Shown in pieces: positions 10,336 through 23,226 of a DNA stretch of 64,000 bases. The notes beneath the pieces were generated by a model, which did no database searches, was not told where the DNA came from, and saw nothing but the letters and a program-made list of their open reading frames with translations. The stretch lies in IMG/VR virus record IMGVR_UViG_3300044625_001067, positions 124,001 through 188,000 of that record. One strand, 5' to 3'. The translations under genes were made by a program, and so were the position numbers. The stretch's first letter is position 1, and each line of letters begins with the position of its first letter.

Positions 10336-10344
10336 GGTTAAACA

Positions 10345-10393: not shown

Positions 10394-10433
10394 TTCGAAA
10401 ATGCTATCGCATTTCTACCCTGTTAAGGGAAGA

Positions 10434-10505: not shown

Positions 10506-10564
10506 TTGTGTCCCAGGTTTGAACCCCGGAAATTTATCACCTTGGGTGGTACCCCGAAGGCAAA

Positions 10565-10635
10565 CTGGGCGCACGGGACTCGAACCCGCAACCTTCCCCA
10601 TCTCAGAGGACGCTCTGCCATTGAGCTAGCACCCA
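10565..10635 (-). tRNA. tRNA, anticodon undetermined
   Basis: Good acceptor (TGGGTGC/GCGCCCA, G73), D and T arms; anticodon arm TCCTC-TGAGAT-GGGGA has a 6-nt loop. Confidence 0.7.
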
Positions 10636-10737
10636 AAACTCCCTAGCACAGTATCTGCAAATACCATTTTAAGGAGGGTTAAGCAATTGCAGTCGCTTCA
10701 CCTGGGGACTTTCACCCGTTTCCCCGGTGTGGGGTCA

Positions 10738-10808
10738 CGATCCTGAGGGGACTCGAACCCCCCTTCACCGGTAGACAGCCGGTGGCCTTCCCTGACGGCA
10801 ACAGGACC
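10738..10808 (-). tRNA. trnD: tRNA-Asp (GTC)
   Basis: GGTCCTG/CAGGATC, loop CT-GTC-TA, G73. Confidence 0.9.
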
Positions 10809-10859
10809 ATATTCCCGGAGTAAATCCGGGAGGGGCCAGGAAACCACTCCTGGACTTTT

Positions 10860-11050
10860 GCTGGGCTAGAGCACAAACCTCGCCCACAGTGAGTTATCGG
10901 CTCATGTCAGGTATCTCACTAACCTTGCACCCCGCTCTTTTTCGTACACGGGGAGTCCCTTGAGCTGGGCACGCTGTATCTTTCTGGTTAGGGGGCCAAC
11001 AGTGCCCTTGCCCGCTTTACTGTATTCCTGACACCGCAACGTGGCGGTCG
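10860..11050 (-). ncRNA. candidate pseudoknotted structured RNA (~190 nt)
   Basis: TGTCAGG/CCTGACA, GGGCAC/GTGCCC, CCCCG/CGGGG, crossing CTAACC/GGTTAG and AGTGAG/CTCACT, TGGGC/GCCCA; no ORF. Confidence 0.55.
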
Positions 11051-11074
11051 GTTCTTGCTTAAGCGTTGAGGCAA

Positions 11075-11148
11075 CACCCTGGGATGGAGTTGAACCATCG
11101 ATCTTCCGGTTCGTAGCCGGACGCTCTAGTCCACTGAGCTACCAGGGC
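11075..11148 (-). tRNA. trnR: tRNA-Arg (ACG)
   Basis: GCCCTGG/CCAGGGT, loop CT-ACG-AA. Confidence 0.93.
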
Positions 11149-11176
11149 ATTGTTTTAAGTTCCCGTTAAGAGAACA

Positions 11177-11258
11177 TACCGACCGAGAGACTCGAACTCT
11201 CACTCCTTTCGGAACCTGATTTTGAGTCAGGCGCGACTACCAATTCCGCCAGGCCGGC
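11177..11258 (-). tRNA. trnL: tRNA-Leu (CAA)
   Basis: GCCGGCC/GGTCGGT, loop CT-CAA-AA, long variable arm. Confidence 0.95.
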
Positions 11259-11333
11259 AATGTTTAAATTTTCAAGTTGCCCCGGAAAACCGGGTCGGGG
11301 GGTGAGAAACAAAGCTCTCTCAACCACTCCTTT

Positions 11334-11378
11334 AGTATAACCGGTTTCGCCGTGGGGCGAAAGGGCGGTTTACCGTCC
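11334..11378 (-). promoter_or_regulatory. promoter cassette heading a tRNA operon
   Basis: Dyad GGCGGTTTACCGTC, TTTCGC-17-TATACT, followed by conserved leader GGTGGTTG...GGCAACTTGAAAATTT. Confidence 0.85.
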
Positions 11379-11393
11379 CTTTGCTGGGGGTCT

Positions 11394-11564
11394 TCAGGTT
11401 AATACGGTGTCCCACACCACCCCAGTAACTGCATCGACAATGTAAATGTCCTCACCAGTTGAGCGGGAAATGTCGCGAGCTGCGTTTATTGCCTCGCCGT
11501 AGCTTGGGTAGCTTTCACCCCCAACAGAATCCCCGGTCACGGCTTTCTTGAGATAAAAGGTCAT
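11394..11564 (-). CDS. hypothetical protein
   Basis: MTFYLKKAV..., downstream of promoter 11588. Confidence 0.6.
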   Translation of the reverse strand: MTFYLKKAVTGDSVGGESYPSYGEAINAARDISRSTGEDIYIVDAVTGVVWDTVLT

Positions 11565-11587
11565 GAGTTTGTTCCGGCTACAGTGCA

Positions 11588-11636
11588 ATCATAGCGCCTT
11601 TCCACCGAAGAGTAAAGGGCGGGTGACCGAACCGCC
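11588..11636 (-). promoter_or_regulatory. repeated promoter cassette
   Basis: TTTACT-17-TATGAT with an adjacent degenerate dyad. Confidence 0.7.
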
Positions 11637-11715
11637 ACCCGAAATTTCTCTCAAGTAGCGGGGTTACGCACCTACTATAGTGCTACCCTGGCAAAGTAAA
11701 CGTGAAACACGCAGG

Positions 11716-11886
11716 TTAGAGGTAAGCGGAGCCAAGGATCACTTGTTCGCTCAGTTCATTAGTTCTCTTCAAGACTTGAGCAGCTTTTAGGAACTTTAAC
11801 GCCACTATGGGGTTAAGCCCACGAGATTGCTTGTACTTCCCCATTAAAGAAAGGTAAAGTTTTTCCGAGTTAGTTAATGTATTCAT
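11716..11886 (-). CDS. hypothetical protein
   Basis: MNTLTNSEKLYLSL..., ATG at 11886. Confidence 0.6.
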   Translation of the reverse strand: MNTLTNSEKLYLSLMGKYKQSRGLNPIVALKFLKAAQVLKRTNELSEQVILGSAYL

Positions 11887-11905
11887 GAGGGGTTCTTTAG
11901 AAGAC

Positions 11906-13066
11906 TTACACACCCTTGTATAGGAGGCTAACTAGATCTTTAGCGTCCGCTTCCGAAAGTTTGGACCAAGGGCCTTGCTCAAAAGTCTTGAGTGGGGATT
12001 GTGTACCATGCATATATAGGGCAACCACCTCGTCTTCTGACAAACCGAACTTTTCTTTTAGTTGCTTATCAACTTGAAACCTGTTTCTTCTAACAGTTCC
12101 CAGTATAGGAAGGTCTTCTTCCAACTTTTTCACGGAGGGCTTCATACTAGCTTTGTCTACTCTATGCATACCCATGACTTTCCACTCACGGGTTTGCCAA
12201 TTTCCGTAATTACCTAAAATAGCTCCTGTAGCATCCGCAGGAACTAGGGCTTCTGACCCTTTCCCGTGCTCCATGCCGGGGAAGTAGAAGGCACCAAGGG
12301 ACTCGGCCAAGGAAGCTTTAAAGCTTTGTTGGGAAAGCCCGAAGTCCACCCACCTCCCCTTTCCTGTCTTCTCTTCTACAAACAGGTTTCCTGGGTGTGC
12401 GTCGTTGTGAGCTACACCTAGTCGATGGAGGTCTGCCAAAGCTTTCCAATAAATATCGGCTGCAGGTGTGCCGGATACTTTTTGTTCGGGATTAGTAGCG
12501 AGAGACTCTATATCTCGCCCTGGAACTTTAGTCATGGCTATTCTACCGTGCCTCAACCCCAAGTGCTCCATGCCCATTTCGTCTGTTCCTTGAGTCTTCA
12601 ATCTGCCGTTTAAGTCAGCGGCTATTAAGTCCGGGCCGAGATCTTTAGCTCCTACTTTCTTTAAAATACTTGCCTCATTCTCTCCGAGAATTCCTCTCTT
12701 TATATATTGCCCCTTTTCGTTCACGGTTACGAACCCGTAAGCACCGCGTCCGGCCACCTGAGCTACGCTGCCTTTCTTGTCGGACCAGTCTTCAAAATCA
12801 GGGTTACCTGTTCTTTTGAGAATTTTGCTCTCAAGTTTTTTGTCATAACTATGCTCGTTGGACATATCCCAATCTTCTCGTCTTGTTGCGGTATCCTTGA
12901 TTTTATTAGTTTTATCTACGTCTTTCGTTGCATTACCAGAAAGTTTATCCTCAATGGAAATCAAAGACTTTGAAACTTGTGGACTAAGAGTTGCAGAACA
13001 CTTTTTAGAACTTTGAACACAGGATGCCCCACAACTCTTTCCGGCTTTACAATTCTTCTTAGTCAT
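11906..13066 (-). CDS. protein kinase-like protein with N-terminal Cys motif
   Basis: GRGAYG Gly loop, LHRLGVAHNDAHPGN catalytic loop, VDFGL; N-terminal CKAGKSCGASCVQSSKKC. Confidence 0.85.
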   Translation of the reverse strand: MTKKNCKAGKSCGASCVQSSKKCSATLSPQVSKSLISIEDKLSGNATKDVDKTNKIKDTATRREDWDMSNEHSYDKKLESKILKRTGNPDFEDWSDKKGSVAQVAGRGAYGFVTVNEKGQYIKRGILGENEASILKKVGAKDLGPDLIAADLNGRLKTQGTDEMGMEHLGLRHGRIAMTKVPGRDIESLATNPEQKVSGTPAADIYWKALADLHRLGVAHNDAHPGNLFVEEKTGKGRWVDFGLSQQSFKASLAESLGAFYFPGMEHGKGSEALVPADATGAILGNYGNWQTREWKVMGMHRVDKASMKPSVKKLEEDLPILGTVRRNRFQVDKQLKEKFGLSEDEVVALYMHGTQSPLKTFEQGPWSKLSEADAKDLVSLLYKGV

Positions 13067-13121
13067 GTGTGTTTGCGCCGATAGCTTAACTTACCCTTAC
13101 GAGTGATCTTTTAGTTCTGTA

Positions 13122-13192
13122 CACGTGGTAGAGGATTCGAACCCCTACGGGGAGTTTTGGAGACTCCAGTCCTACCGTTAGACGAACCACGT
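13122..13192 (-). tRNA. trnW: tRNA-Trp (CCA)
   Basis: ACGTGGT/ACCACGT, loop CT-CCA-AA. Confidence 0.92.
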
Positions 13193-13216
13193 AGGTTTGA
13201 GTTTCGCGTTAGCGAA

Positions 13217-13298
13217 AGCGGGTAACAGGATTCGAACCTGCGTGAACTATTCGCCTCTTGTTTGGAAAACAAGTGCTCTACCGCTGAGCTATACCCGC
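13217..13298 (-). tRNA. trnG: tRNA-Gly (TCC) with 15-nt variable arm
   Basis: GCGGGTA/TACCCGC, loop TT-TCC-AA, variable region AGGCGAATAGTTCAC. Confidence 0.9.
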
Positions 13299-13329
13299 AT
13301 TTTACTTGAGTTTTTTCGTGAGAGAAAAG

Positions 13330-13402
13330 AGCGGTCGACGTGACTCGAACACGCGACTTTCTACTTGGAAGGAAGACACTCTACCGACTGAGTTACGACC
13401 GC
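13330..13402 (-). tRNA. trnG: tRNA-Gly (TCC)
   Basis: GCGGTCG/CGACCGC, loop CT-TCC-AA. Confidence 0.9.
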
Positions 13403-13438
13403 ATTTTGCTTTAGTGTAATTTTCGCGTAAGCGAAAAG

Positions 13439-13511
13439 GGTGATAGACGGGACTCGAACCCGCTAATTACTGGTTCACAACCAGTTGCCCATCCCTTAGG
13501 CTTCTACCACC
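13439..13511 (-). tRNA. trnH: tRNA-His (GTG)
   Basis: Encoded G-1:C73 pair, loop TT-GTG-AA. Confidence 0.92.
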
Positions 13512-13542
13512 ATTGTAGGGGAGTTTCTGACTAATTTAAGCT

Positions 13543-13589
13543 AGATGATTGTGTTTCCAATAACGAAGGAGTTAATTGCTGAATCATCT
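13543..13589 (-). repeat. stem-closed CAGCAA loop element, copy 3 (diverged interior)
   Basis: Same AGATGATT-CAGC.A...AATCATCT frame with a different inner sequence. Confidence 0.7.
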
Positions 13590-13610
13590 ACTTTTCTGCA
13601 GAGCAGAAAA

Positions 13611-13684
13611 TGGCGGACCGGGGAATTGAACCCCTGTTCCTCTGGGTTATGGGCCCAGCGTGACTACCGTGACACTCGTCCGCG
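13611..13684 (-). tRNA. trnfM: initiator-type tRNA-fMet (CAT), C33
   Basis: Unpaired C1:C72, GGG/CCC anticodon stem, loop CC-CAT-AA. Confidence 0.82.
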
Positions 13685-13735
13685 TTACACCTATACTATA
13701 GCGTTTTTAGCTAGGAGTAAACTTCTCAAGGCAAG

Positions 13736-13806
13736 TTCCTAAGATAGGATTCGAACCTATATAATCTCCTTCAAAGGGAGGTGTCCTTCCGTTAGACGAC
13801 TCAGGA
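13736..13806 (-). tRNA. trnQ: tRNA-Gln (TTG)
   Basis: TCCTGAG/CTTAGGA (U1:A72), loop CT-TTG-AA. Confidence 0.88.
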
Positions 13807-13881
13807 TCGGCTGCCTTAAGTAGGGAGGCTATTATAGCCCCCTAAGATGAAAGTAAACTCTTGGCTAAGGTAGCAAGGAAA

Positions 13882-14000
13882 GGAGCAAGGTTGGACTTGA
13901 ACCAACGGCTTGCTTTGCCCTCCAGCGTTACGGTCCTTTACCGAGGGTCTCTTGCGAGACTCAGAGGAGGTTGCCGCTCTACCAACTGAGCTACTTGCTC
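13882..14000 (-). ncRNA. tRNA-like RNA A (anticodon arm replaced by branched domain)
   Basis: Perfect acceptor GAGCAAG/CTTGCTC, canonical D and T arms, ~65-nt insert with two hairpins. Confidence 0.8.
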
Positions 14001-14050
14001 TTTGCACCCTGAATTAAGTCAAGGAGCTAGAGTTCTCCGTAAAGAGAACA

Positions 14051-14132
14051 TACCCGCCGGGAGACTCGAACTCCCACGCCTTTCGGCACTAGTTCCTAAA
14101 ACTAGCGTATATACCAGTTTCACCAGGCGGGC
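14051..14132 (-). tRNA. trnL: tRNA-Leu (TAG)
   Basis: GCCCGCC/GGCGGGT, loop TT-TAG-GA. Confidence 0.94.
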
Positions 14133-14160
14133 TTGACTGTGATCCCTATGAAAGGGAAAG

Positions 14161-14232
14161 AGCGAACGAAGGGATTTGAACCCTCGACATTCTCGTTGGC
14201 AACGAGGTACTCTACCGCTGAGTTACGTTCGC
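14161..14232 (-). tRNA. trnG: tRNA-Gly (GCC)
   Basis: GCGAACG/CGTTCGC, loop TT-GCC-AA. Confidence 0.95.
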
Positions 14233-14274
14233 ATTGCTCCTTGGAGCAGTTTTCTTCTGCTTTTACAGAAGGTA

Positions 14275-14362
14275 CGGAGAGAACAGGAATCGAACCTGCG
14301 CAGGGGGTCTCCCCCCTGTAACCGTTTTCAAGACGGTCTCCTCGTCCAGCCGGACTCTCTCC
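14275..14362 (-). tRNA. trnS: tRNA-Ser (TGA), atypical D arm
   Basis: GGAGAGA/TCTCTCC, loop CT-TGA-AA, 7-bp variable stem with GAGA loop. Confidence 0.88.
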
Positions 14363-14411
14363 AGTTACCGTAGCACGGTAAGTTTTAGCTAGAAAACCGG
14401 AAGGTTTTCAA

Positions 14412-14570
14412 TGGGAAATGTTGGATTTGAACCAACGCTCTCTCAACTGATCAGGTTGTGAGCGTGCTGTTACAAAGGCGAAGGTCGGGGATCAATCCGC
14501 CATTCGACACTCGTACTGAAGCACTCACCTGGGTAATGTGCCCAGGGCTCTACCGCTGAGCTAATTTCCC
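14412..14570 (-). ncRNA. tRNA-like RNA B (~95-nt variable region)
   Basis: Acceptor GGGAAAT/ATTTCCC, canonical D and T arms, arm CCTGGG-CACATTA-CCCAGG, large structured insert. Confidence 0.8.
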
Positions 14571-14637
14571 GTTAACTCTGTTGACCGGAATTGAATCGGT
14601 CCCTGAACGTGCTGCCGTTTTTCTGCAAAGCAGAAAA

Positions 14638-14709
14638 TGGGGCATCTCGGATTCGAACCGAGGACTGACCGGTTAAAAGCCGGATACTCTACCGCTGAGT
14701 TAATGCCCC
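14638..14709 (-). tRNA. trnK: tRNA-Lys (TTT)
   Basis: GGGGCAT/ATGCCCC, loop CT-TTT-AA. Confidence 0.95.
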
Positions 14710-14792
14710 CCGTATTAAATTTTCAAGTTGCCTTTTGCTTTCGCAAAAGCGGGGAGGAGGTGAAGGCGAAGCCCTCTCTCAACCACCCCTTT

Positions 14793-14836
14793 AGTATAAC
14801 CGGTTTCGCCGAAAGGTGAAAGGGCGGGAAACCGCC
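14793..14836 (-). promoter_or_regulatory. promoter cassette heading a tRNA operon
   Basis: Dyad GGCGGGAAACCGCC, TTTCAC-17-TATACT, conserved leader. Confidence 0.85.
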
Positions 14837-14839
14837 GTA

Positions 14840-15064
14840 TCAAAGGGTGAACTCAAATACAACCTTGCGAACAAAGAAATCGTCAAGGTGCCCGTTGCCG
14901 TACATCCTGACGCAGTCCTGCAGCTTCGCAAGAATCTCGTCGTGGGTGGGAGCGGATGCCCCCTCTTCCAAAAGCTCGGTGAGTTCTCCAGCGATGGAGA
15001 CACAAAGTTCGTGCTCCTTACGAGCACTCAACCCTTTAAGGGTGCCGAAAGTTGCTTGAGCCAT
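14840..15064 (-). CDS. hypothetical protein, paralog of 8298..8537
   Basis: ATG 15064 (MAQATFGTLKGLSARKEHELCVSI). Confidence 0.8.
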   Translation of the reverse strand: MAQATFGTLKGLSARKEHELCVSIAGELTELLEEGASAPTHDEILAKLQDCVRMYGNGHLDDFFVRKVVFEFTL

Positions 15065-15095
15065 TTTGACTTGGAGGACCAACGGTAACAATTTA

Positions 15096-15161
15096 AGTTT
15101 AGCTGGTTTCACCGTGAAGCGAAAGGGTGGGAAACCGCCCCGGTTCGTTCGGTTAACTGAG
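15096..15161 (-). promoter_or_regulatory. repeated promoter cassette
   Basis: TTTCGC-17-TAAACT with dyads upstream. Confidence 0.7.
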
Positions 15162-15176
15162 CGAGTCACGGAGCAA

Positions 15177-15247
15177 AGCCCTGCCAGGGAATCGAACCCT
15201 GCTCTGCAGTTTACAAAACTGCTGCATCACCACAATGCTTGAAGGGC
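15177..15247 (-). tRNA. trnT: tRNA-Thr (TGT)
   Basis: Loop TT-TGT-AA; one acceptor mismatch. Confidence 0.85.
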
Positions 15248-15277
15248 ATTTTCCTTGTAGTTCTTCGGGGAGAACAA

Positions 15278-15366
15278 CGGAAGATGTGAGATTCGAACTC
15301 ACGGAGCTGCTTGCGCAGCTCAACGGTTTAGCAAACCGTCGCCTTCAACCACTCGGCCAATCTTCC
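15278..15366 (-). tRNA. trnS: tRNA-Ser (GCT)
   Basis: GGAAGAT/ATCTTCC, loop TT-GCT-AA, long variable arm. Confidence 0.94.
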
Positions 15367-15386
15367 AAAATTTCTCGTTAGAGAAA

Positions 15387-15459
15387 TTGCCCCAACCGGA
15401 TTCGAACCGGTATTTCCACCTTGAGAGGGTAGCGACCTAAGCCATTAGTCGATGAGGCC
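15387..15459 (-). tRNA. trnE: tRNA-Glu (CTC)
   Basis: Loop CT-CTC-AA, G1:A72 mismatch. Confidence 0.88.
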
Positions 15460-15496
15460 GTTTTCTGCGAAAAACAGAGAGTTTGCTTAAGCAAAG

Positions 15497-15569
15497 TAGG
15501 AATGACAGGATTCGAACCTGTGTATCTCGGTAATCGGCCGAAGGTATTAGGCCACTATACGACATTCTC
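15497..15569 (-). tRNA. trnI: atypical tRNA-Ile (GAT), C33/U37
   Basis: Loop CC-GAT-TA, weak acceptor end. Confidence 0.7.
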
Positions 15570-15630
15570 AGAAAACGAGCAGTTACGTATGATGCTCAGC
15601 ACAGGTTCCCCAGCAAAAGGGCTGAGAGGA

Positions 15631-15702
15631 TGGGAGCACTCGGGAACGACCCGAGGGCCTTTTCCGTGTCAAAGAAACGCTCTACCACTGAGCTATGCTC
15701 CC
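15631..15702 (-). tRNA. trnV: tRNA-Val (GAC), atypical T loop GTCGTTC
   Basis: GGGAGCA/TGCTCCC, loop TT-GAC-AC. Confidence 0.87.
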
Positions 15703-15813
15703 AACCGGAGCAGTCACGCTCCGTACCTAGTTTCCTATAATTGCCTACTCGTGTCATCGCGGAAGTTGACGAAACTTCTAGAACTTTCGGCTCAAGTGGT
15801 GTTAGGCACCTGA

Positions 15814-15968
15814 TTAAAGTGGAGAGACTCGAACTCCCATAGCAGGATTACGTCTAGCTGTCACCTGCACGGTGGTTGCAACCATGAGCTAGGAGGTTGC
15901 TATTTGTTCACAACCCCATCCGTATTGGCTGAATCCACACCGCCGTATACCAATTCCGGCACACTTTG
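15814..15968 (-). ncRNA. tRNA-like RNA C (Leu-type body, expanded anticodon and variable arms)
   Basis: AAAGTG/CACTTT acceptor, Leu-type D arm CCG-GAATTGGTATA-CGG, T arm GGGAG-TTCGAGT-CTCTC, ~65-nt insert closed by GGTG/CACC, GCAGG/CCTGC variable stem. Confidence 0.78.
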
Positions 15969-16027
15969 TTCTTAGCGTTTGAGGAGAACCTGAAGTAGGT
16001 CCCTCTTCTTTCTCTCTGTAAGAGAAA

Positions 16028-16100
16028 CTGGAGTGGGAGGGTTCGAACCTCCAACGAAGCGGTTAACAGCCGCACGATCTGCCAATTGATCTACACCCCA
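16028..16100 (-). tRNA. trnN: tRNA-Asn (GTT)
   Basis: TGGGGTG/CACTCCA, loop CT-GTT-AA. Confidence 0.92.
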
Positions 16101-16252
16101 TTGAGCCCTGCATTACGGCAGAGGGTACTAAGAAGCACTCCGGGGTCGCGAGCGTCCCCATACGAGTAGGAATCGTTACTGAAACCGGTTATTACTGTCC
16201 CTTAAGTTGCAAACCGACAACCTCGCTTAAGGAATTTTCGCGAGTGCGAAAA

Positions 16253-16325
16253 TGGAGACAATCGGAATTGAACCGATCACAAGTCGCTTGCGAAGCGTCC
16301 TCGCCACCCTGGAACATGTGCCCCC
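16253..16325 (-). tRNA. trnA: tRNA-Ala (CGC), atypical D arm
   Basis: G3:U70, loop TT-CGC-AA. Confidence 0.8.
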
Positions 16326-16431
16326 GTTTTCCTATCGGAAAACAAAAGTTAGCCGATAGGGGACAGAGCGTCTCACCTCTGCGAGGAACGTTTCAGTTCG
16401 TTTTCCCCTTAGGGAAGTTGCCCGAAGGCAA

Positions 16432-16504
16432 TGGGTTTGGTGGGATTCGAACCCACAACATACCGGGTAAGAGCCGGTTACTCTGCCAATTGAGCTACAA
16501 ACCC
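16432..16504 (-). tRNA. trnK: tRNA-Lys (CTT)
   Basis: GGGTTTG/CAAACCC, loop CT-CTT-AC. Confidence 0.94.
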
Positions 16505-16567
16505 GAACCCCAAGTTTAGAAAGCACCATCGCAGGTACTTGGGCAACCTTTTTCGCTAACGCGAAAA

Positions 16568-16640
16568 TGGGAACGGCCTGATTTGAACAGGCGGCCTATC
16601 GGTTATCAACCGATTGCTCTTACCGCTGAGCTACGCTCCC
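16568..16640 (-). tRNA. trnI: tRNA-Ile (GAT)
   Basis: GGGAGCG/CGTTCCC, loop TT-GAT-AA. Confidence 0.93.
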
Positions 16641-16715
16641 TTGGTACTAAATTGTCAAGTTGCCCCCCGGAAACCGGGTCAGTAAGGAAAGCGGAAGCTT
16701 TCCAACCACCCCTTT

Positions 16716-16759
16716 AGTATAACCGGTTTTGCCGTAGGGCGAAAGGGCGGTTTACCGCC
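16716..16759 (-). promoter_or_regulatory. promoter cassette heading a tRNA operon
   Basis: Dyad GGCGGTTTACCGCC, TTTCGC-17-TATACT, conserved leader. Confidence 0.85.
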
Positions 16760-16817
16760 CCCTTCACCCCTGGTCAACATTGAAGTATTCACTCAGGAAT
16801 GCTTGCGTAAGCAAACA

Positions 16818-16892
16818 TGGCGAGAGGCAGGATTTGAACCTGCGATCTCCAGCTTATGAGACTGGCGAGATACCGGGCTTCTCCACTCCGCT
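16818..16892 (-). tRNA. trnM: tRNA-Met (CAT)
   Basis: Loop CT-CAT-AA; acceptor needs a 1-nt bulge. Confidence 0.82.
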
Positions 16893-16948
16893 ATAAAGAC
16901 CTAGTATTTCAGTTCGGTTTTCGTTTTACGAAAAATGCCCAAGGGCAA

Positions 16949-17056
16949 TGGGTATGGACAGGATTCGAACCTGCAATGCCAGAGGCGACTGCTGTACTTA
17001 CAGCCCACTATTCCCAAGAACCGTGTACACAATTCCTGCTTCAGTGAGACATACCC
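16949..17056 (-). ncRNA. tRNA-like RNA D (Tyr-derived, expanded D arm, 4-nt anticodon loop)
   Basis: GGGTATG/CATACCC acceptor, T arm GCAGG-TTCGAAT-CCTGT, long hairpin in the D position, GCTGT-AAGT-ACAGC arm, GCC-TCT-GGC variable arm. Confidence 0.72.
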
Positions 17057-17079
17057 GTGAAGTTTCCGATAGGAAACAA

Positions 17080-17162
17080 TGGGAGCGGTAGGATTCGAAC
17101 CTACGAAGCATTGAGCAACCGGGTTACAGCCGGTCTCCTTTGACCACTCGGAGAACACTCCC
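17080..17162 (-). tRNA. trnY: tRNA-Tyr (GTA)
   Basis: GGGAGTG/CGCTCCC, loop CT-GTA-AC. Confidence 0.93.
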
Positions 17163-17169
17163 ATTTTGC

Positions 17170-17358
17170 TCTGCAGACACTGCTTTGGGTTGAGCCACCC
17201 CCTACTTTGTATCTCTAAAGTAGTAAAATAGGTTCTTCTAATTGCGGTTTTAACCGCATAACGAGAGAAGTTTTTGGATTTCGAAGAAACCTTTGCACCC
17301 CTTAAACTACCCAAGCATGGAGCTCAGGGGCTGAGTCGAACAGCCATTTCTCTCTTTT
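17170..17358 (-). ncRNA. possible circularly permuted tRNA-like/tmRNA-like element
   Basis: Orphan T arm GGCTG-TTCGACT-CAGCC followed by ...GAGCTCCA; downstream GGGGTGCAAAGGTTTC and several hairpins. Confidence 0.35.
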
Positions 17359-17377
17359 ATTTTCGCGTGAGCGAAAA

Positions 17378-17458
17378 TGGGTCAGGTGGGACTCGAACCC
17401 ACGGTGTTTGTATATCCGGTTAAAAGCCGGGACCTGTCGCCGCTAAGGTAACTGACCC
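17378..17458 (-). tRNA. trnK: atypical tRNA-Lys (TTT) with 12-nt variable loop
   Basis: GGGTCAG/CTGACCC, loop CT-TTT-AA, variable TATACAAACACC. Confidence 0.8.
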
Positions 17459-17533
17459 ATGGTGTTAAATTGTCAAGTTGCCTCCCGCAAGAGCGGAAGC
17501 GAGGCGGAAGCCGAGCTTCCCAACCACCCCTTT

Positions 17534-17576
17534 ACTATAGCGTTTTTCACCGGGCAAGTAAAGCGGGGAAACCGCC
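17534..17576 (-). promoter_or_regulatory. promoter cassette heading a tRNA operon
   Basis: TTTACT-17-TATAGT, dyad, conserved leader. Confidence 0.85.
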
Positions 17577-17616
17577 CTCTTGAACCCCCAGTCGCAAGCT
17601 AGCTTAGCGCACCCTC

Positions 17617-17850
17617 TCAAAAGTAAACCTTTTTAAGGCTGTCGAATACTTCTGCAATCTCGGTGAATCCTAGATAGCGAACGAAGTCCACAAGGAGACC
17701 GTCGGCTTTCACGTGGTCACTCTTTATGTCCCCGATCGTATTTACTTCTTGACTCTCTCTAATCTGATTCAAGTCTTTCAGTGTCTGTTGGGCTTTGAGA
17801 AAGTTTTCAACTTTCTGCTCAATTAAGTAACGTTCGGTATGGTCTTCCAT
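17617..17850 (-). CDS. hypothetical protein
   Basis: 77 aa ORF. Confidence 0.7.
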   Translation of the reverse strand: MEDHTERYLIEQKVENFLKAQQTLKDLNQIRESQEVNTIGDIKSDHVKADGLLVDFVRYLGFTEIAEVFDSLKKVYF

Positions 17851-17884
17851 AATTCTCGCGTGGTTTGCGTAAAGTGAGTATAGG

Positions 17885-18040
17885 TCAGTAACCAGCTTTC
17901 TCTAGAGCTTCGCGTACCCTGTCGATTTCGTCGTCCCAAGCGTACATTCCATCTAAGCTGACTAGCCTTGCGGTCAAGGCATCAAAAGCCAGCAAAATCT
18001 CTTTGCTGTCACGTTCGTTAGCTTTGGTTTCGTTGGACAT
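17885..18040 (-). CDS. hypothetical protein
   Basis: ATG 18040 (MSNETKANE) downstream of promoter 18066. Confidence 0.6.
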   Translation of the reverse strand: MSNETKANERDSKEILLAFDALTARLVSLDGMYAWDDEIDRVREALEKAGY

Positions 18041-18065
18041 GGCGTTGACGGGTTTGACTGTGGTA

Positions 18066-18109
18066 ACTATAGCGGTTTTCACAGGGGAAGTAAAGCCGGG
18101 AAACCGCCC
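18066..18109 (-). promoter_or_regulatory. repeated promoter cassette
   Basis: TTTACT-17-TATAGT, dyad GCCGGGAAACCGCC. Confidence 0.85.
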
Positions 18110-18116
18110 TGCTAGC

Positions 18117-18518
18117 TCAGTTCCAGGGTGCAAACAATTCGCCGCTCCCGTACCCAGTTAGCGTATTCATTACTCGACCCCACCACGAGGTTCTTCGATT
18201 AAGGACTCTGCGTGCCTGGGCGTAAGAGACGGAGGGCACGGATACCTCCGTGACACCGTTGTTCGAGCGAAAGGAAACCCAGTGTCCCACCCACTTCCAA
18301 GGGCTAACCAGAACTGCGTCCCCGTTGCTGCCAAGGTAAGCACTCTCACAGAAGACTATATAAGAGTATTCTCCTACTTCTTCGCCTGTCTCAGGGTGAT
18401 TGAAGTGTGTGGTCACCGTAACCTGCTTGTCTGAGTGATTGTCAATCGAAAACAATGTAGTTTTCTCGATGAGCGAAGGTTTTGTGGAGAACATTGGTTT
18501 GCTTGTGTGTACTAACAA
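18117..18518 (-). CDS. hypothetical protein
   Basis: 133 aa ORF; alternative ATG at 18494. Confidence 0.7.
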   Translation of the reverse strand: MLVHTSKPMFSTKPSLIEKTTLFSIDNHSDKQVTVTTHFNHPETGEEVGEYSYIVFCESAYLGSNGDAVLVSPWKWVGHWVSFRSNNGVTEVSVPSVSYAQARRVLNRRTSWWGRVMNTLTGYGSGELFAPWN

Positions 18519-18524
18519 TGGAGG

Positions 18525-18713
18525 TTAGACTCCGAACTTAACCTTCTCAACTTCGAACCAGTCCCCGTCGTCTTCTGGAGGTTCATTCGGTAAGCCAAGG
18601 TTGAAGCCAGCTGTCAAAGCAGAGACCTCAGTTGAATGGGCAGAGACGAGTCGGCTTTTCCGAATGTCAAAGTCTCCCCATCTGAAAATTAGGAGGACGA
18701 AAATGTGGTCCAT
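18525..18713 (-). CDS. hypothetical protein
   Basis: ATG 18713 (MDHIFVLLIF) downstream of promoter 18740. Confidence 0.6.
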   Translation of the reverse strand: MDHIFVLLIFRWGDFDIRKSRLVSAHSTEVSALTAGFNLGLPNEPPEDDGDWFEVEKVKFGV

Positions 18714-18739
18714 TGTGAGCTGGTGATACTTGCCTTTAA

Positions 18740-18783
18740 AGTATACCGTGTCTGCCGAGCAGGAACAAGGGCGGGAAACCGCC
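18740..18783 (-). promoter_or_regulatory. repeated promoter cassette
   Basis: TTGTTC-17-TATACT, dyad GGCGGGAAACCGCC. Confidence 0.85.
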
Positions 18784-18819
18784 CTTAACGGGACTGTCAA
18801 CCCTACAACCCGTACAAGC

Positions 18820-19260
18820 TTACGGCATTGTGCGATTGAAAAAGTCGTAGCCAGGGTAGTCTCCTCCCCAACTGAAAAATTCGTAAGTGATGTCCTTAAA
18901 CTTCCGGGTACTCGCCAGCTTCTGGTCAATAGACCAGCCGTATTGAAGAAGATTGTAAAGGCTCCTGGCGAACCCTTGATGGAGTCTCAGGAGAAAAACT
19001 GCCTCGTCCGTTCCTTGAACCTTACGAACTTTCCACAGGGCTTTTAGTAGCTTTTCGCACGCCTCATAGAGAACTTTAAACCGTCTTTTCTTACCTACAG
19101 GAAAAATCTTGTACTTTTCGTAGTTTGCTTCCGCCTCAATTACGTCTGCGTGGGCAGTCTCAAAGTCTAGGTCGTTGTCAGCAACCATGAAGAAATTCCC
19201 TGAGACAATCCCACCAGAGCACTCTGTTGGCAGAGCGATGGTGTCGTAGTTGATTTTCAT
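18820..19260 (-). CDS. hypothetical protein
   Basis: ATG 19260 (MKINYDTIAL). Confidence 0.7.
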   Translation of the reverse strand: MKINYDTIALPTECSGGIVSGNFFMVADNDLDFETAHADVIEAEANYEKYKIFPVGKKRRFKVLYEACEKLLKALWKVRKVQGTDEAVFLLRLHQGFARSLYNLLQYGWSIDQKLASTRKFKDITYEFFSWGGDYPGYDFFNRTMP

Positions 19261-19305
19261 GGTTAAATTCGGAGTTTCCAGGGACAAGGTGTAAACTGAG
19301 TCGAG

Positions 19306-19476
19306 TTAAAGCATTGGGAGGGGTTTCAACAGGACCCCGTCGTACCCCTCATCGGTAAGCTCCTGCCGGTACGCTTCAGCGTCCCTCTTATGCACAAAAA
19401 GACGCAGACGGGAATCTTCGAAACCAAAGGAGTCAACAAACCCGTAAGGTTCGATCATTACCGCAAAAACTTCCAT
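19306..19476 (-). CDS. small hypothetical protein (56 aa)
   Basis: Manual translation MEVFAVMIEPYGF...KPLPML; directly after promoter 19515; below the ORF-track cutoff. Confidence 0.6.
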   Translation of the reverse strand: MEVFAVMIEPYGFVDSFGFEDSRLRLFVHKRDAEAYRQELTDEGYDGVLLKPLPML

Positions 19477-19514
19477 GTCCTTTTCCCTGAGGGGCGGTGT
19501 TGCCCTGTGTGTAT

Positions 19515-19579
19515 ATTATAGCGTTTCTGCCGAGCAAACCAAGCTGGAAAACCGCCTTATGGGGGTAGGGTTTACCGCC
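19515..19579 (-). promoter_or_regulatory. repeated promoter cassette (last minus-strand copy)
   Basis: TATAAT, TTGGTT (16-bp spacing), two dyads. Confidence 0.75.
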
Positions 19580-19592
19580 CTTTACGCAGTAA

Positions 19593-19888
19593 AGACCGCC
19601 CTCTTTACATGGAAACACGGAAGGCACTGTTGAGGCTCCAGTCACGAACGCCGAAGGAGACGATCTTGACGACTTGACGAGCTGGGGGAATACGACGGTG
19701 AGAAGGATGGGGTGTGGTCGGACCAGGACCCTAAGTTTGATGGGGTGAACGTTGAGTCCACACACTCCCTGGCGAAGCTACTCACATCAAGTGTTATGGA
19801 GCCTATCATGGAGATCATGTTCGGTTCTGACAACGTCATAGTTGCGACTCGTGCCGGATTTAGTGTAGACCAAGCGGACCACGACTGA
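19593..19888 (+). pseudogene. 5'-truncated, frameshifted remnant of a phage hypothetical gene
   Basis: Startless frames ...LHGNTEGTVEAPVTNAEGDDLDD and, shifted, LDELGEYDGEKDGVW...MFGSDNVIVATRAGFSVDQADHD*; protein-like acidic composition. Confidence 0.45.
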
Positions 19889-21738: not shown

Positions 21739-23226
21739 ATGACATTTGTGACAGAAAACTTAACGAAGAGTTCTAAAGCTGCTTCGAACGGAAATGGAAA
21801 ATGCAACGATAACTGTTCTGTGAGTGAAGCCGTTGTCTGTGATTTACGCTCTCGCCCGGAACCTCGTCGAATTGACCTCGACAAACTATACGAGTGCGAC
21901 CCGAAAGACTATATTGGCTATTTTGCCGACGAAACCTCTTACGACAACCTTATTCAAGAAGACTGCGACGTTTATGTGGGCGGAGTGAAAGTTGTTGCCT
22001 TTCGTAAGGCACTTTTTCCGAAGCTGCGCGATGGTTCGAAAGGTAGCCCGGAAACTTGGAAATACTTCCGCTGGGCAGCAAGAGACTTGTACTCAGACCA
22101 ACGAGGCCTAGTTGCTGGTAGAGAACTAACTACCCAACTCGAGATAAGGGTAACCAACGGTATTCTAAACTTCTTCAAGAAGGCGATGGCCGGTCAAGTC
22201 ACTGACGTGGAAGAGGCACTGAAAATTGCTTCTCTCTCCCCCGACATGTCAAAGCTCACTGTCCGAGTGAATGATGTTAAAAAGGACTTCCCAGAAATTG
22301 AGAAAGCTTTAGAATCTATCGAGAAGGAACTTCGCAAGAAAACGCTGAGCGAAGAAAGAAAGGTAGAGCTGAAGGAAGCGAAGGGTAGAGAACTTGCGAA
22401 GTGGTTCCCGACTTGGCTGTCTGAGACTTGGAGTGCATCTACGGATAAGGTTTCTGAGGCGAAACGTGCCGACGACAGGTATGTGGGAAAACAATACCGT
22501 TCAAACAAGTGCTATTCCAACGTGATTGGTGCTTTTGATAGGGGTGCACGTAACCCTTACGGTCGTTTGACCGCAACAACTGTAAAAGACTATGAGGGGT
22601 TCGTAAGCCACACGGATATTTATCAGACCGCGTGCTCTGCGCTCAAAGAGACCTTGAACACTCCGGAAAACCCTCGGTGGGACCTCCTTCACGAACGGTT
22701 CAGTAACGTGAAAGACCCGCACTATAACCTCTTCGGTACGGTGTTCACTGCCCTTACGTTAAACTGGAACTTCCGCTGTGCGATGCACTATGATGGAAAT
22801 AACTGCGAAGGTGGTATTGCCGTTCTTACTGCAATTACTCAGGGCGAATATGACGGTCACTACCTTGTGTTCCCTGAAATTCGTTGCGCTTTTGACCTTC
22901 GCGACGGAGATTTCATTGCAGGCGACAACCAGGGCTTGATTCACGGCAACACCGCGATGATCCCTAAAACTCCGGACGCTGAACGAGTTTCGTTCGTTTT
23001 CTATTCACGAGAGCGCATGACCGCTCTTGACGATATGGAGTGTGAGGAGTGCCGCCGAGATTTCATGCGATACGCAGCAGACAACCACAAGGAATACGGA
23101 AAGGGTCACAAGACATGGAATGGTGTCTGGAGCGGAATGTGGAAATCACCGGAATGGATGACGTATAAAGCCGAACACGGCATGGAACGTTGCTCAAATA
23201 CTAACTATTGGGGCACCGATAATTGA
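21739..23226 (+). CDS. 2OG-Fe(II) dioxygenase, TET/JBP family (copy 1)
   Basis: FTALTLNWNFRCAMHYD (HxD), IHGNT (distal His), ERVSFVFYSRE (2OG Arg), YLVFPE; matches the JBP/TET pattern. Confidence 0.85.
   Translation: MTFVTENLTKSSKAASNGNGKCNDNCSVSEAVVCDLRSRPEPRRIDLDKLYECDPKDYIGYFADETSYDNLIQEDCDVYVGGVKVVAFRKALFPKLRDGSKGSPETWKYFRWAARDLYSDQRGLVAGRELTTQLEIRVTNGILNFFKKAMAGQVTDVEEALKIASLSPDMSKLTVRVNDVKKDFPEIEKALESIEKELRKKTLSEERKVELKEAKGRELAKWFPTWLSETWSASTDKVSEAKRADDRYVGKQYRSNKCYSNVIGAFDRGARNPYGRLTATTVKDYEGFVSHTDIYQTACSALKETLNTPENPRWDLLHERFSNVKDPHYNLFGTVFTALTLNWNFRCAMHYDGNNCEGGIAVLTAITQGEYDGHYLVFPEIRCAFDLRDGDFIAGDNQGLIHGNTAMIPKTPDAERVSFVFYSRERMTALDDMECEECRRDFMRYAADNHKEYGKGHKTWNGVWSGMWKSPEWMTYKAEHGMERCSNTNYWGTDN

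What the first reader, a model, noticed from the sequence alone, without database searches (positions are those of the whole stretch)
16949..17056. tRNA-like RNA D: Tyr-derived element with long D-arm hairpin and collapsed anticodon loop
It sits immediately downstream of tRNA-Tyr (17080-17162) and retains Tyr hallmarks: GGGT.TG acceptor, CTGTAA, and a short paired variable arm. But the D position holds TCACT...AGTGG enclosing a ~10-bp hairpin (AGGAATTGTG/CACGGTTCTT), and CTGTAA is folded into GCTGT-AAGT-ACAGC with a 4-nt loop. It looks like a duplicated tRNA remodelled with compensating structure rather than simple decay (inference).
Basis: partly seen in the sequence, partly recalled or inferred. 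Interest (0 to 1): 0.62.

Follow-up and report, generated by a model that had tools for sequence, protein, structure and literature searches.

The report
Odd tyrosine tRNA with optional hairpin
This is a real, evolutionarily maintained but non-standard tyrosine-type tRNA gene in the tRNA array of a 277-kb freshwater phage; its anticodon loop is intact rather than collapsed, and the long hairpin in its D-loop is an add-on that some strains carry, some lack, and one relative has replaced with a different hairpin at the same spot.

Summary
The 108-nt element at 16949-17056 (minus strand) exists as described, 22 nt downstream of tRNA-Tyr. Seven distinct versions recovered from lake metagenomes and viral contigs show a conserved cloverleaf: 98.5% of cells pair, and six stem pairs outside the hairpin carry compensatory changes (acceptor, D, anticodon and T stems). 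It is therefore not a decaying pseudogene. Bacterial tyrosine identity marks (G1-C72, A73, G34-U35-A36, stem-loop extra arm) are invariant. The family-specific model scores the phage's two canonical tRNA-Tyr genes next best. Departures from a standard tRNA are an extra connector nucleotide, a bulged U in the T-stem, C37, and A33 in the window's allele only. ARAGORN does not call it, and Rfam scores stay below threshold (25.6 of 29 bits without the hairpin). The D-loop hairpin lies just 5' of G18G19. It is present in two versions, absent in four, replaced by an unrelated hairpin in one, and polymorphic within one lake sample. Most likely it is an auxiliary tRNA-Tyr variant linked to conflict over tRNA-Tyr, either a nuclease-insensitive spare or a decoy. 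Expression and charging are untested.

The parts
16949..17056 (-). Whole element D: 108-nt non-canonical tRNA-Tyr(GUA)-like gene (RNA position p = 17057 minus window coordinate)
   Evidence: seven-sequence alignment A3; structure counts; models R1/R2 score it at about 100 bits
17050..17056 (-). Acceptor stem, 5' strand GGGUAUG (pairs with 16950-16956)
   Evidence: 100% paired in 7 sequences; compensatory changes at pairs 2-106 (GC>AU, L065) and 7-101 (GC>AU, L066)
17047..17049 (-). Connector UCU: 3 nt where standard tRNAs have 2
   Evidence: Invariant; Rfam's alignment of the L049 version places an inserted nucleotide here
17043..17046 (-). D-stem, 5' strand CACU (pairs with 17006-17009 AGUG)
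   Evidence: 100% paired; compensatory changes at 13-49 (CG>UA) and 14-48 (UA>CG, UG)
17015..17038 (-). Type-1 hairpin inserted in the D-loop immediately 5' of the conserved GG; 10 bp with 3 G.U pairs and loop GUAC
   Evidence: Missing as a 25-nt deletion in a co-occurring strain. Absent in L049, L048, L066 and L064, near-identical in L065, and replaced by an unrelated hairpin in L050. Unique in the 277-kb genome
17010..17014 (-). D-loop 3' part GGAAU, with invariant GG aligned to G18 G19
   Evidence: G43 and G44 invariant; Rfam's alignment puts them on the model's GG
17000..17005 (-). Anticodon stem, 5' strand GGCUGU (pairs with 16987-16992 GCAGUC)
   Evidence: 97.6% paired; 55-67 UA>CG compensatory; 53-69 GU>AU and 57-65 UG>UA single-sided changes
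16993..16999 (-). 7-nt anticodon loop AAGUACA; anticodon GUA at 16995-16997; A33 in this allele (U33 in the other six versions); C37 and A38 invariant
16975..16986 (-). Extra (variable) arm GCC-UCU-GGC followed by AUU
   Evidence: Stem invariant, loop U/A variable; treated as the variable-region insert in Rfam's alignment
16957..16974 (-). T-arm GCAGG-UUCGAAU-CCUG(U)C with one extra nucleotide (bulged U99 with a G83-C100 pair, or G83.U99 plus an unpaired C100)
   Evidence: compensatory change at 84-98 (CG>UA) in L064; canonical tRNA-Tyr 9440-9522 also has a bulged U in this strand
16949..16956 (-). Acceptor stem 3' strand CAUACCC plus discriminator A73; no encoded CCA
17057..17078 (-). Spacer between tRNA-Tyr and the element: small hairpin GUUUCC-UAU-CGGAAAC followed by UUCAC; the same leader precedes the element in L048, L066 and L065
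17079..17163 (-). Canonical tRNA-Tyr(GUA) directly upstream
   Evidence: ARAGORN; Rfam 39.1 bits; second-best hit of model R1 at 49 bits
9440..9522 (-). Second canonical tRNA-Tyr(GUA). Its acceptor GGGUGUG/CACACCC differs from the element's by one compensatory pair, and it also has a bulged U in the T-stem

Best explanation
Element D is a functional, selectively maintained member of a small family of non-canonical class-II tRNA-Tyr(GUA) paralogs, carried as a movable cassette in the tRNA arrays of a freshwater, cyanophage-related group of large phages. Shown here: it has a conserved cloverleaf with covarying acceptor, D, anticodon and T stems, an intact 7-nt anticodon loop with invariant G34-U35-A36-C37-A38, and the bacterial tyrosine identity set. 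It also has three fixed departures from a standard tRNA: a 3-nt connector, a bulged U in the T-stem, and C37. The long 'D-arm' is a 25-nt hairpin inserted into the D-loop just 5' of G18G19. It is optional: present or absent between strains, and replaced by a different hairpin in one lineage. Inferred: the RNA is transcribed with the array, trimmed at G1 and A73, given CCA (the phage encodes a CCA-adding-type nucleotidyltransferase) and tyrosylated by the host TyrRS. It then serves beside the phage's two ordinary tRNA-Tyr genes as an auxiliary tRNA-Tyr. Its altered anticodon loop (C37 instead of the modifiable A37, with changeable positions 31/32/33/39) would make it a poor substrate for host enzymes that recognise or cut tRNA-Tyr, in the way phage tRNAs are known or proposed to escape tRNA-directed defence. 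The hairpin would be a tolerated or arms-race decoration at the solvent-exposed corner of the elbow.
For: Structure and selection. On 7 distinct sequences, 98.5% of cells pair and 12 pairs have double changes, six of them outside the hairpin (2-106, 7-101, 13-49, 14-48, 55-67, 84-98). No shuffle of 500 reaches the observed score, and slid controls pair at only 36-42%.

Conservation. Core identity to the window is 83-92% in arrays whose same-anticodon tRNAs have a median identity of only 69-79%. The 3' flank diverges right after A108.

Tyr relationship. Model R1 scores the two canonical tRNA-Tyr genes at 49 and 45.5 bits, against 32.5 bits or less for all other tRNAs. R2 gives about 52 bits for the canonical Tyr genes in G019 and G020. 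The acceptor stem and the bulged U in the T-stem are shared with tRNA-Tyr 9440-9522.

Identity elements. A73, U35, G1-C72 and the long arm (PMC9976931) are all invariant.

Near-canonical core. The hairpin-less L049 version aligns end to end with Rfam's tRNA model at 25.6 bits.

Optional hairpin..

Phage CCA-adding-type enzyme..

Variation. It is concentrated at loop positions 32/33 and the closing pair 31-39, while positions 34-38 are invariant.

Precedent. Phage tRNA-Tyr overcomes the tRNA-Tyr-depleting retron-Eco7 PtuAB (PMC11555353), and anticodon-loop mutations are proposed to evade anticodon nucleases (PMC10264068).
Against: No direct evidence of transcription, processing, CCA addition or charging. 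Contigs from RNA libraries cover parts of the element (16872-17014; 17049-17164), but DNA carry-over cannot be excluded.

C37 never occurs among the phage's 49 called tRNAs. A pyrimidine at position 37, and A33 in the window's own allele, should weaken decoding (established tRNA knowledge).

Two canonical tRNA-Tyr genes already cover decoding.

An engineered insert between C16 and G18 of E. coli tRNA-Tyr, the same spot, was not stably expressed (PMC5397188). That insert was much larger than 25 nt.

Only 7 sequences are available, and parts of them were ascertained with patterns taken from the element itself. No host and no tRNA-Tyr-directed nuclease is known for this system.
Confidence: 0.5

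Rival explanations
1. tRNA-Tyr decoy or sponge. The RNA keeps the shape and the 34-38 loop face of tRNA-Tyr so that it binds a host tRNA-Tyr-directed nuclease or modification enzyme. It is not meant to decode. The type-1 hairpin may display a second anticodon-loop-like motif (UGUACA).
For: Positions 34-38 are invariant while U33, which is critical for decoding, is A in the window's allele and position 32 varies. C37 is absent from all 49 called tRNAs. Two canonical tRNA-Tyr genes already exist, and the element always co-occurs with one. Sequence conservation is unusually high for a phage tRNA, as expected for several sequence-specific contacts. The type-1 hairpin apex and 3' arm, UGUGUACA-CGGU, match the L048-type anticodon arm at 12 of 13 positions, p about 0.001-0.002. 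Distribution is patchy and cassette-like, as for anti-defence genes.
Against: All elements needed for charging and an L-shape of canonical dimensions are kept, including G18G19 and the T-loop, which a decoy for the anticodon loop alone would not need. Six of seven versions have U33. The type-2 hairpin has no anticodon-like motif. No target enzyme is known.
Confidence: 0.25
2. Non-translational stable tRNA-like RNA with another role (regulatory, processing-related or a protein handle), like the small stable RNAs of unknown function in the T4 tRNA cluster (recalled from memory, not tested).
For: It is not called by ARAGORN or by Rfam at threshold. The same array holds several other conserved tRNA-like RNAs of 73-159 nt with large insertions.
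Against: The complete Tyr identity set and an invariant GUA in a 7-nt loop would be unexplained.
Confidence: 0.12
3. Decaying duplicate of tRNA-Tyr: a pseudogene with no function.
For: Indels, including the 25-nt hairpin and single-nucleotide indels, separate co-occurring strains. Against the close relative L049 the element differs more (93% core identity) than neighbouring tRNAs do (99-100%). Gene finders reject it.
Against: Six compensatory double changes fall in four different stems, and only 3 of 205 cells are unpaired. Identity is 83-92% across arrays where canonical tRNAs are about 70-79% identical. Differences cluster in loops and not in stems or the T-loop. The element is retained next to different neighbours.
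Confidence: 0.05
4. The hairpin is an intervening sequence removed from the precursor, so the mature RNA is an ordinary-sized tRNA.
For: Removing the 25 nt restores a standard D-arm. Hairpin-less alleles exist.
Against: No splicing system for such a short D-loop insert is known in bacteria or their phages (general knowledge). No group I or II intron model matches. Hairpin-less alleles are DNA variants in DNA runs, not spliced products.
Confidence: 0.03

Closest known systems
Bacterial-type class II tRNA-Tyr(GUA), including the phage's own two copies (17079-17163 and 9440-9522)
   Same: 7-bp acceptor with G1-C72, A73, GUA anticodon in a 7-nt loop, stem-loop extra arm, G18G19, and T-loop UUCGAAU. 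The acceptor differs from the 9440 copy by one compensatory pair, and both have a bulged U in the 3' strand of the T-stem.
   Different: 3-nt connector, C37 instead of A37, A33 in this allele, a D-loop hairpin in some alleles, sub-threshold Rfam scores and no ARAGORN call.
Phage tRNAs proposed or shown to counter tRNA-targeting defence: T5 tRNA-Tyr against retron-Eco7 PtuAB (PMC11555353), T5 tRNA-Lys against PARIS (PMC11464382), and anticodon-loop mutations (PMC10264068)
   Same: A phage-encoded extra copy of a tRNA with an altered anticodon loop, sitting in a large tRNA array.
   Different: Those are structurally ordinary tRNAs. Here the body is also non-standard and carries optional expansions, and no defence system or host is known. 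The functional link is inference only.
Naturally non-canonical tRNAs: tRNA-Sec, selC* tRNA-Cys, tRNA-Pyl, allo-tRNA (review PMC7609411)
   Same: Individual oddities have precedents: a bulge in the T-stem (A51a of selC* tRNA-Cys), a 6-bp anticodon stem abutting the D-stem (tRNA-Pyl, tRNA-Sec), and altered connector length. The tRNA-Sec model gives 33.4 bits on the L064 version.
   Different: The anticodon is GUA, not UCA or CUA. The acceptor is 7 bp, not 8 or 9. The score is below gathering (47). That review describes no hairpin inserted in the D-loop.
Engineered tRNA-aptamer fusions (Spinach-tRNA-Tyr, PMC5397188)
   Same: A structured insert placed in a loop of tRNA-Tyr. The D-loop site tested, between C16 and G18, is the same site as the natural hairpins.
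   Different: The engineered D-loop fusion, with a large insert of roughly 100 nt, was not detectably expressed, and only the V-loop fusion worked. Here the natural inserts are 24-26 nt, and type 1 is retained in two diverged phages.

Membership tests
tRNA (Rfam RF00005 / ARAGORN cloverleaf) | 7-bp acceptor stem closing the molecule, with an unpaired discriminator | tested here: met
   100% paired in 7 sequences with two compensatory pairs
tRNA (Rfam RF00005 / ARAGORN cloverleaf) | D-arm with a 3-4 bp stem and a loop containing G18G19 | tested here: met
   4-bp covarying stem and invariant GG aligned to the model's GG; the window allele adds a 24-nt hairpin inside the loop
tRNA (Rfam RF00005 / ARAGORN cloverleaf) | Anticodon stem with a 7-nt loop, U33 and a purine at position 37 | tested here: not met
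   The 7-nt loop is conserved, but position 37 is C in all 7 versions and position 33 is A in the window allele
tRNA (Rfam RF00005 / ARAGORN cloverleaf) | T-arm with a 5-bp stem and GTTCRANYC loop, stacked directly on the acceptor stem | tested here: inconclusive
   The loop and 5 pairs are present, but one extra nucleotide (bulged U99 or unpaired C100) is invariant. An accepted tRNA-Tyr of the same phage also has a T-stem bulge
tRNA (Rfam RF00005 / ARAGORN cloverleaf) | Score at or above the curated threshold, or a call by the gene finder | tested here: not met
   Window allele: no RF00005 match at E<=10. L049 allele: 25.6 bits against a threshold of 29. ARAGORN calls none of the versions
Bacterial tRNA-Tyr identity | A73, U35 (with G34 and A36), G1-C72 and a long extra arm (PMC9976931) | tested here: met
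   All invariant in A3. Actual tyrosylation is not testable with these tools
Bacterial tRNA-Tyr identity | Closest relatives among tRNAs are tRNA-Tyr genes | tested here: met
   R1 scores Tyr at 49 and 45.5 bits, all others at 32.5 or less. R2 scores Tyr at about 52 bits in G019 and G020
tRNA pseudogene | Unconstrained decay: stems broken, no compensatory change, less conserved than functional tRNAs | tested here: not met
tRNA-Sec (RF01852) | UCA anticodon, 8/5 or 9/4 acceptor/T helices, 6-bp D-stem, score of 47 or more | tested here: not met
   GUA anticodon and 7-bp acceptor; 15.7 bits (window) and 33.4 bits (L064 version)
Intron-containing tRNA (group I or bulge-helix-bulge) | An insert with intron-type structure that is removed from the RNA | tested here: inconclusive
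   No intron family match, and the 24-nt insert is far smaller than a group I intron. Removal from the RNA is not testable here. Hairpin-less forms are DNA alleles
Dispersed palindromic repeat / miniature mobile element (for the hairpin) | Multiple copies in the genome | tested here: not met
   Only the one copy within 6 substitutions in the 277-kb genome

The most novel reading that the evidence does not exclude
A phage-borne family of tRNA-Tyr mimics that tolerates, or exploits, interchangeable hairpin modules plugged into the D-loop next to G18G19. In type 1 the module may be a copied anticodon stem-loop. The family would act as an anti-defence RNA, either a decoy or an uncleavable spare, against host systems that deplete tRNA-Tyr. 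This would be the first natural tRNA scaffold with a modular D-loop expansion, and an RNA-based counter-defence beyond simple tRNA replacement.
Probability: 0.25. Interest if true: 0.8.

Novelty: new variant of a known kind. Interest (0 to 1): 0.6.

Why it matters
Phage tRNA arrays are being reinterpreted as counter-measures against host systems that destroy tRNAs. This element shows that such arrays can hold conserved genes that standard tRNA finders miss. It also shows that a tRNA-Tyr body can evolve fixed oddities (C37, a T-stem bulge, a longer connector) and accept swappable hairpins in the D-loop, a site where an engineered insert failed. If the RNA is charged and used, it widens the known structural tolerance of the translation machinery and offers a natural scaffold for tagging tRNAs. 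If it is a decoy, it is a new kind of RNA anti-defence. Either way, tRNA counts in uncultured phages are underestimated.

Tried and rejected
1. DNA similarity of the element plus tRNA-Tyr against 50,697 phage records gave no match. The 9-kb array gave only short generic tRNA hits.

2. The exact pattern built on the 'collapsed' hairpin plus T-loop found nothing in viral contigs, because relatives differ in exactly that hairpin. The 25-mer from the T-arm and acceptor also found nothing in viral contigs, but found 5 metagenome contigs.

3. Neighbouring proteins, the 386-aa kinase-like ORF and the 77-aa ORF, found no relatives.

4. Relatives were reached through the DNA polymerase.
- G001 is about 95% identical from window position 19642 onward but lacks the array at that place.
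- G002's contig starts inside the array, and where it can be compared (the Pro-Met junction) it has no element.
- G003, a complete genome, has no homolog.

5. The genome contigs pattern scan gave two hits, in an Azospirillum and a Prevotellaceae assembly. Neither matches model R2, so both are chance.

6. Hairpin as a dispersed repeat: rejected, single copy.

7. Phage-encoded TyrRS or RtcB ligase: none found.

8. Expression: contigs from RNA libraries overlap the element, but they cannot show transcription, ends or strand.

9. Hairpin types 1 and 2 as homologous: considered unlikely. They share only 3 of 10 pairs, while the rest of the RNA is about 90% identical.

Full report
**Setting.** The window is bases 124001-188000 of a 277,244-bp IMG/VR virus record estimated 98% complete. 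Its DNA polymerase is 57% identical to that of Synechococcus phage S-CBWM1 and about 34% identical to those of S-TIM5-like cyanophages. Public runs that hold the stretch are lake or freshwater metagenomes from 19 studies. The minus strand between about 660 and 17460 carries 34 ARAGORN-called tRNAs. The whole genome has 49 tRNAs plus a permuted tmRNA.

**Observation.**
- Acceptor GGGUAUG/CAUACCC followed by A.
- A D-position stem enclosing a 10-bp hairpin with three G.U pairs.
- GCUGUAAGUACAGC at the anticodon position.
- A small GCC-UCU-GGC arm.
- A textbook T-loop, UUCGAAU.

Canonical tRNA-Tyr (17079-17163) lies 22 nt upstream. The fold is better than chance (MFE -41.2 kcal/mol, z = -3.1). 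ARAGORN does not call the element, Rfam reports nothing at gathering score, and a sensitive scan gives no tRNA match at E<=10. RNAfold itself is split. The MFE has a 6-bp stem with a 7-nt loop, AAGUACA.

**Finding relatives.** Direct DNA searches and neighbouring proteins failed. Polymerase-based relatives were mostly fragments.
- G001 is about 95% identical from window position 19642 onward but has no array there, so the array lies in a variable region.
- Laying Logan contigs of four runs on 16300-17700 showed a co-occurring strain in two lake DNA runs. In it the element lacks 25 nt at about 17015-17040, which is exactly the hairpin, and has two 1-nt deletions and G65>C.
- The window form is present in the same sample at lower depth (2.8 against 22.5).
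- Pattern scans then recovered full copies: L052 (identical), L049, L048, L050 and a partial L051 from metagenomes, and L064, L065, L066 from viral contigs using a pattern from a different part of the RNA.

This gives seven distinct sequences, aligned without ambiguity as A3.

**What the comparison shows.**

1. The cloverleaf is under selection. With the 7-nt-loop structure, 98.5% of 205 cells pair, and 12 pairs have changes on both sides. Six of these lie outside the hairpin:
- acceptor 2-106 and 7-101 (GC>AU);
- D-stem 13-49 (CG>UA) and 14-48 (UA>CG);
- anticodon stem 55-67 (UA>CG);
- T-stem 84-98 (CG>UA).

No shuffle of 500 reaches the observed score, and slid controls pair at only 36-42%.

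2. The anticodon loop is not collapsed. Four of its five pairs are broken in some sequence, and none covaries. Helix 52-57/65-70 is 97.6% paired with one compensatory and two single-sided changes. The loop is N32-U33-G-U-A-C37-A38. GUACA is invariant and U33 is present in six of seven versions; only the window allele has A33.

3. It is Tyr-type. G1-C72, A73, G34-U35-A36 and a stem-loop extra arm are invariant. These are the bacterial tyrosine identity elements (PMC9976931). The family model scores the phage's two canonical tRNA-Tyr genes at 49 and 45.5 bits, against 32.5 or less for all other tRNAs. The same holds in two other phages. The acceptor differs from tRNA-Tyr 9440-9522 by one compensatory pair.

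4. The core is near-canonical but not canonical. Without the hairpin, the L049 version aligns end to end with Rfam's tRNA model at 25.6 bits, against a threshold of 29. The alignment shows an inserted nucleotide in the 8-9 connector, a bulged U99 in the T-stem (G83 pairing with C100), and C37. The L064 version scores 33.4 bits on tRNA-Sec (threshold 47), because its 6-bp anticodon stem abuts the D-stem and it has a long arm. Either way, the D and anticodon helices stack to ten layers, as in a normal tRNA (my inference from the alignments). A bulged U in the T-stem also occurs in the accepted tRNA-Tyr at 9440-9522 (47.9 bits). C37 occurs in none of the phage's 49 called tRNAs.

5. It is not a pseudogene. 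Core identity to the window is 83-92% in five arrays whose same-anticodon tRNAs have a median identity of 69-79%. Against the near-identical array L049, whose tRNAs are 99% identical, the element differs at six core positions. All six lie in the D-loop or at 57-59/65, the 5' side of the anticodon loop and its closing pair. The combination of slow overall change with fast change at a few loop positions fits either targeted diversification or relaxed constraint at exactly those sites.

6. It behaves as a cassette. Its neighbours are:
- Tyr|D|Met in the window and L049;
- Tyr|D|Ile in L048 and L066;
- Pro|D|Met in L065;
- Ala|D in L064, where the contig ends 20 nt downstream of the element;
- a 73-nt tRNA-like gene|D|Gly in L050.

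G002 has the Pro-Met junction without the element. In every record where it could be checked, the element co-occurs with a canonical tRNA-Tyr. The complete genome G003 has neither.

**The hairpin.** It sits between the A16-equivalent position and the invariant GG that aligns with G18G19.
- Type 1 (window, L052, L065) is 10 bp with three G.U pairs, so it is an RNA-level helix on the minus strand.
- Type 2 (L050) is a 9-bp, near-perfect palindrome of unrelated sequence, in the same register and of the same length. Both alleles total 108 nt.
- Four versions have plain D-loops of 7-11 nt.
- Closest relatives differ in hairpin state: window against L049, and L050 against L064. Both states coexist in one lake sample. 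Gain and loss are therefore frequent.
- The hairpin is single-copy in the genome.
- The apex and 3' arm of type 1 (UGUGUACA-CGGU) match the anticodon arm of the L048/L066 allele (UGUGUACAGCGGU) at 12 of 13 positions, with p about 0.001-0.002 against shuffles before correcting for the arms tried. It may therefore be a copied anticodon arm. Type 2 shows no such match.
- An engineered Spinach insert at this same site in E. coli tRNA-Tyr was not stably expressed, whereas a V-loop insert was functional (PMC5397188). The natural hairpins are about four times smaller.

**Mechanism.** Shown: this is a selected tRNA-Tyr-like RNA gene with an intact anticodon loop and optional D-loop hairpins.

Inferred: it is transcribed within the array and trimmed at the conserved ends. 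It receives CCA, since none is encoded and the phage has a PolyA_pol/CCA-adding-family gene (68 bits). It would be charged by the host TyrRS, since the phage has none.

I consider it most likely an auxiliary tRNA-Tyr tied to conflict over tRNA-Tyr. Phage tRNA-Tyr is known to overcome a tRNA-Tyr-depleting retron effector (PMC11555353). Altered anticodon loops are proposed to evade anticodon nucleases, including colicin E5, which targets GUN-anticodon tRNAs (PMC10264068).

Whether it acts as an uncleavable spare (my first choice, 0.5 including the descriptive part) or as a decoy (0.25) cannot be decided here. C37, A33 in this allele and the presence of two ordinary Tyr genes favour the decoy. 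Full retention of charging and L-shape elements favours the spare.

**Comparison and novelty.** Each single oddity has a precedent in known non-canonical tRNAs: a T-stem bulge in selC* tRNA-Cys, and 6-bp anticodon stems in tRNA-Pyl and tRNA-Sec (PMC7609411). That review and my literature searches turned up no natural tRNA with a hairpin inserted in the D-loop and no C37 tRNA-Tyr. I therefore rate it a new variant of a known kind: phage-encoded, non-canonical tRNA.

**Limits.**
- Only seven sequences are available.
- Two discovery patterns came from the element itself, but the second pattern did not include the acceptor, D-arm or T-arm, where most covariation was seen.
- There is no proof of expression.
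- The host is unknown; the phage's cyanophage-like polymerase hints at a cyanobacterium.

Noticed in passing
window 14412-14570 (-): A 159-nt tRNA-like gene with canonical acceptor, D and T arms, an anticodon arm CUGGG-CACAUUA-CCCAG (CAU with A33 and U37), and a structured insertion of about 85 nt in the variable region. It is a natural analogue of engineered V-loop fusions. ARAGORN does not call it.
   Followed up: partly
window 13882-14000 (-); L049:5240-5358: A 119-nt tRNA-like gene with normal D and T arms and about 46 extra nt in the anticodon region. The L049 ortholog scores 45 bits on Rfam's tRNA model.
   Followed up: partly
window 16253-16325 (-); L040 (G002) ~190-262: A 73-nt tRNA-like gene with an odd D region and a loop UUCGCAA (CGC; UGC in G002), conserved with 3 differences. 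ARAGORN misses it in the window. A similar gene precedes element D in L050.
   Followed up: partly
window 15814-15968 (-); L040 ~880-1040: An RNA of about 155 nt ending in a T-arm and closed by an acceptor-like helix, CAAAGUG/CACUUUA. G002 has UGAAGUG/CACUUCA, a compensatory change. Its nature is unknown.
   Followed up: partly
window 16028-16100 vs L049:3151-3231, L052:839-919, L050:5108-5189: tRNA-Asn(GUU) exists as a 73-nt form and as an 81-82-nt form with an extra variable-arm hairpin (GUC-GAAA-GAC). L052 is identical to the window at element D but carries the 81-nt Asn, so single tRNA genes are swapped like cassettes between otherwise identical arrays.
   Followed up: partly
window 17377-17459 (-), 13217-13298 (-): tRNA-Lys(UUU) of 83 nt with a 13-nt variable loop; L049 and L048 have an unrelated 73-74-nt Lys(UUU) at that place. 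tRNA-Gly(UCC) of 82 nt has an extra arm. Loop expansions are common in this array.
   Followed up: partly
window 10737-10809, 15496-15569 (-); G000:43675-43747: Both tRNA-Asp(GUC) genes have U37, and one tRNA-Ile(GAU) has C33 and U37. With C37 in element D, several GUN-anticodon tRNAs of this phage carry a pyrimidine at position 37.
   Followed up: no
window 660-19640 vs G001: A relative with 99% identical DNA polymerase is collinear at about 95% identity from window position 19642 onward. It has unrelated sequence in place of the whole tRNA array and the small ORFs at 17617-19287, so the array is a variable island.
   Followed up: yes
G000:104340-104723 (-), outside the window: ARAGORN calls a permuted tmRNA with tag peptide ANNIVKFERIAVAV.
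   Followed up: no
G000:30395-30814 (+), outside the window: An ORF of the PolyA_pol / CCA-adding nucleotidyltransferase family (68 bits). This fits tRNA genes that lack an encoded CCA.
   Followed up: partly
L040 (G002) ~3150-3360; L041 (G003) ~9765-9900 (-): A conserved stretch of about 155-200 nt ending in a T-arm and acceptor (..CCAGGUUCGAUUCCCUGGUUGGGGCA). It looks like a tRNA interrupted by a long insert, possibly a group I intron. At the corresponding place the window has an uninterrupted tRNA at 13611-13684 that scores just above Rfam's threshold (31 bits against 29) and that ARAGORN does not call.
   Followed up: no
window ~16641-16665 and ~17460-17480 (-); 16703-16761: The motif GGCAACUUGACAAUUUA recurs just upstream of two tRNAs. 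A 59-nt intergenic segment (16703-16761) recurs in many other contigs at high depth, including RNA libraries, and twice in one 6-kb contig.
   Followed up: no
window 21739-23226 (+), 23614-25101 (+), 11906-13066 (-): Next to or inside the array are a Tet/JBP-type 2OG oxygenase, a protein of phrog_24024 with weak queuine tRNA-ribosyltransferase (DpdA-like) similarity, and a 386-aa protein with weak kinase-fold matches.
   Followed up: no
window 17319-17345 (-): An isolated T-arm-like hairpin, GGCUG-UUCGACU-CAGCC, with no convincing acceptor stem, between tRNA-Lys and tRNA-Tyr. One DNA run shows a variant that skips 17238-17359.
   Followed up: no
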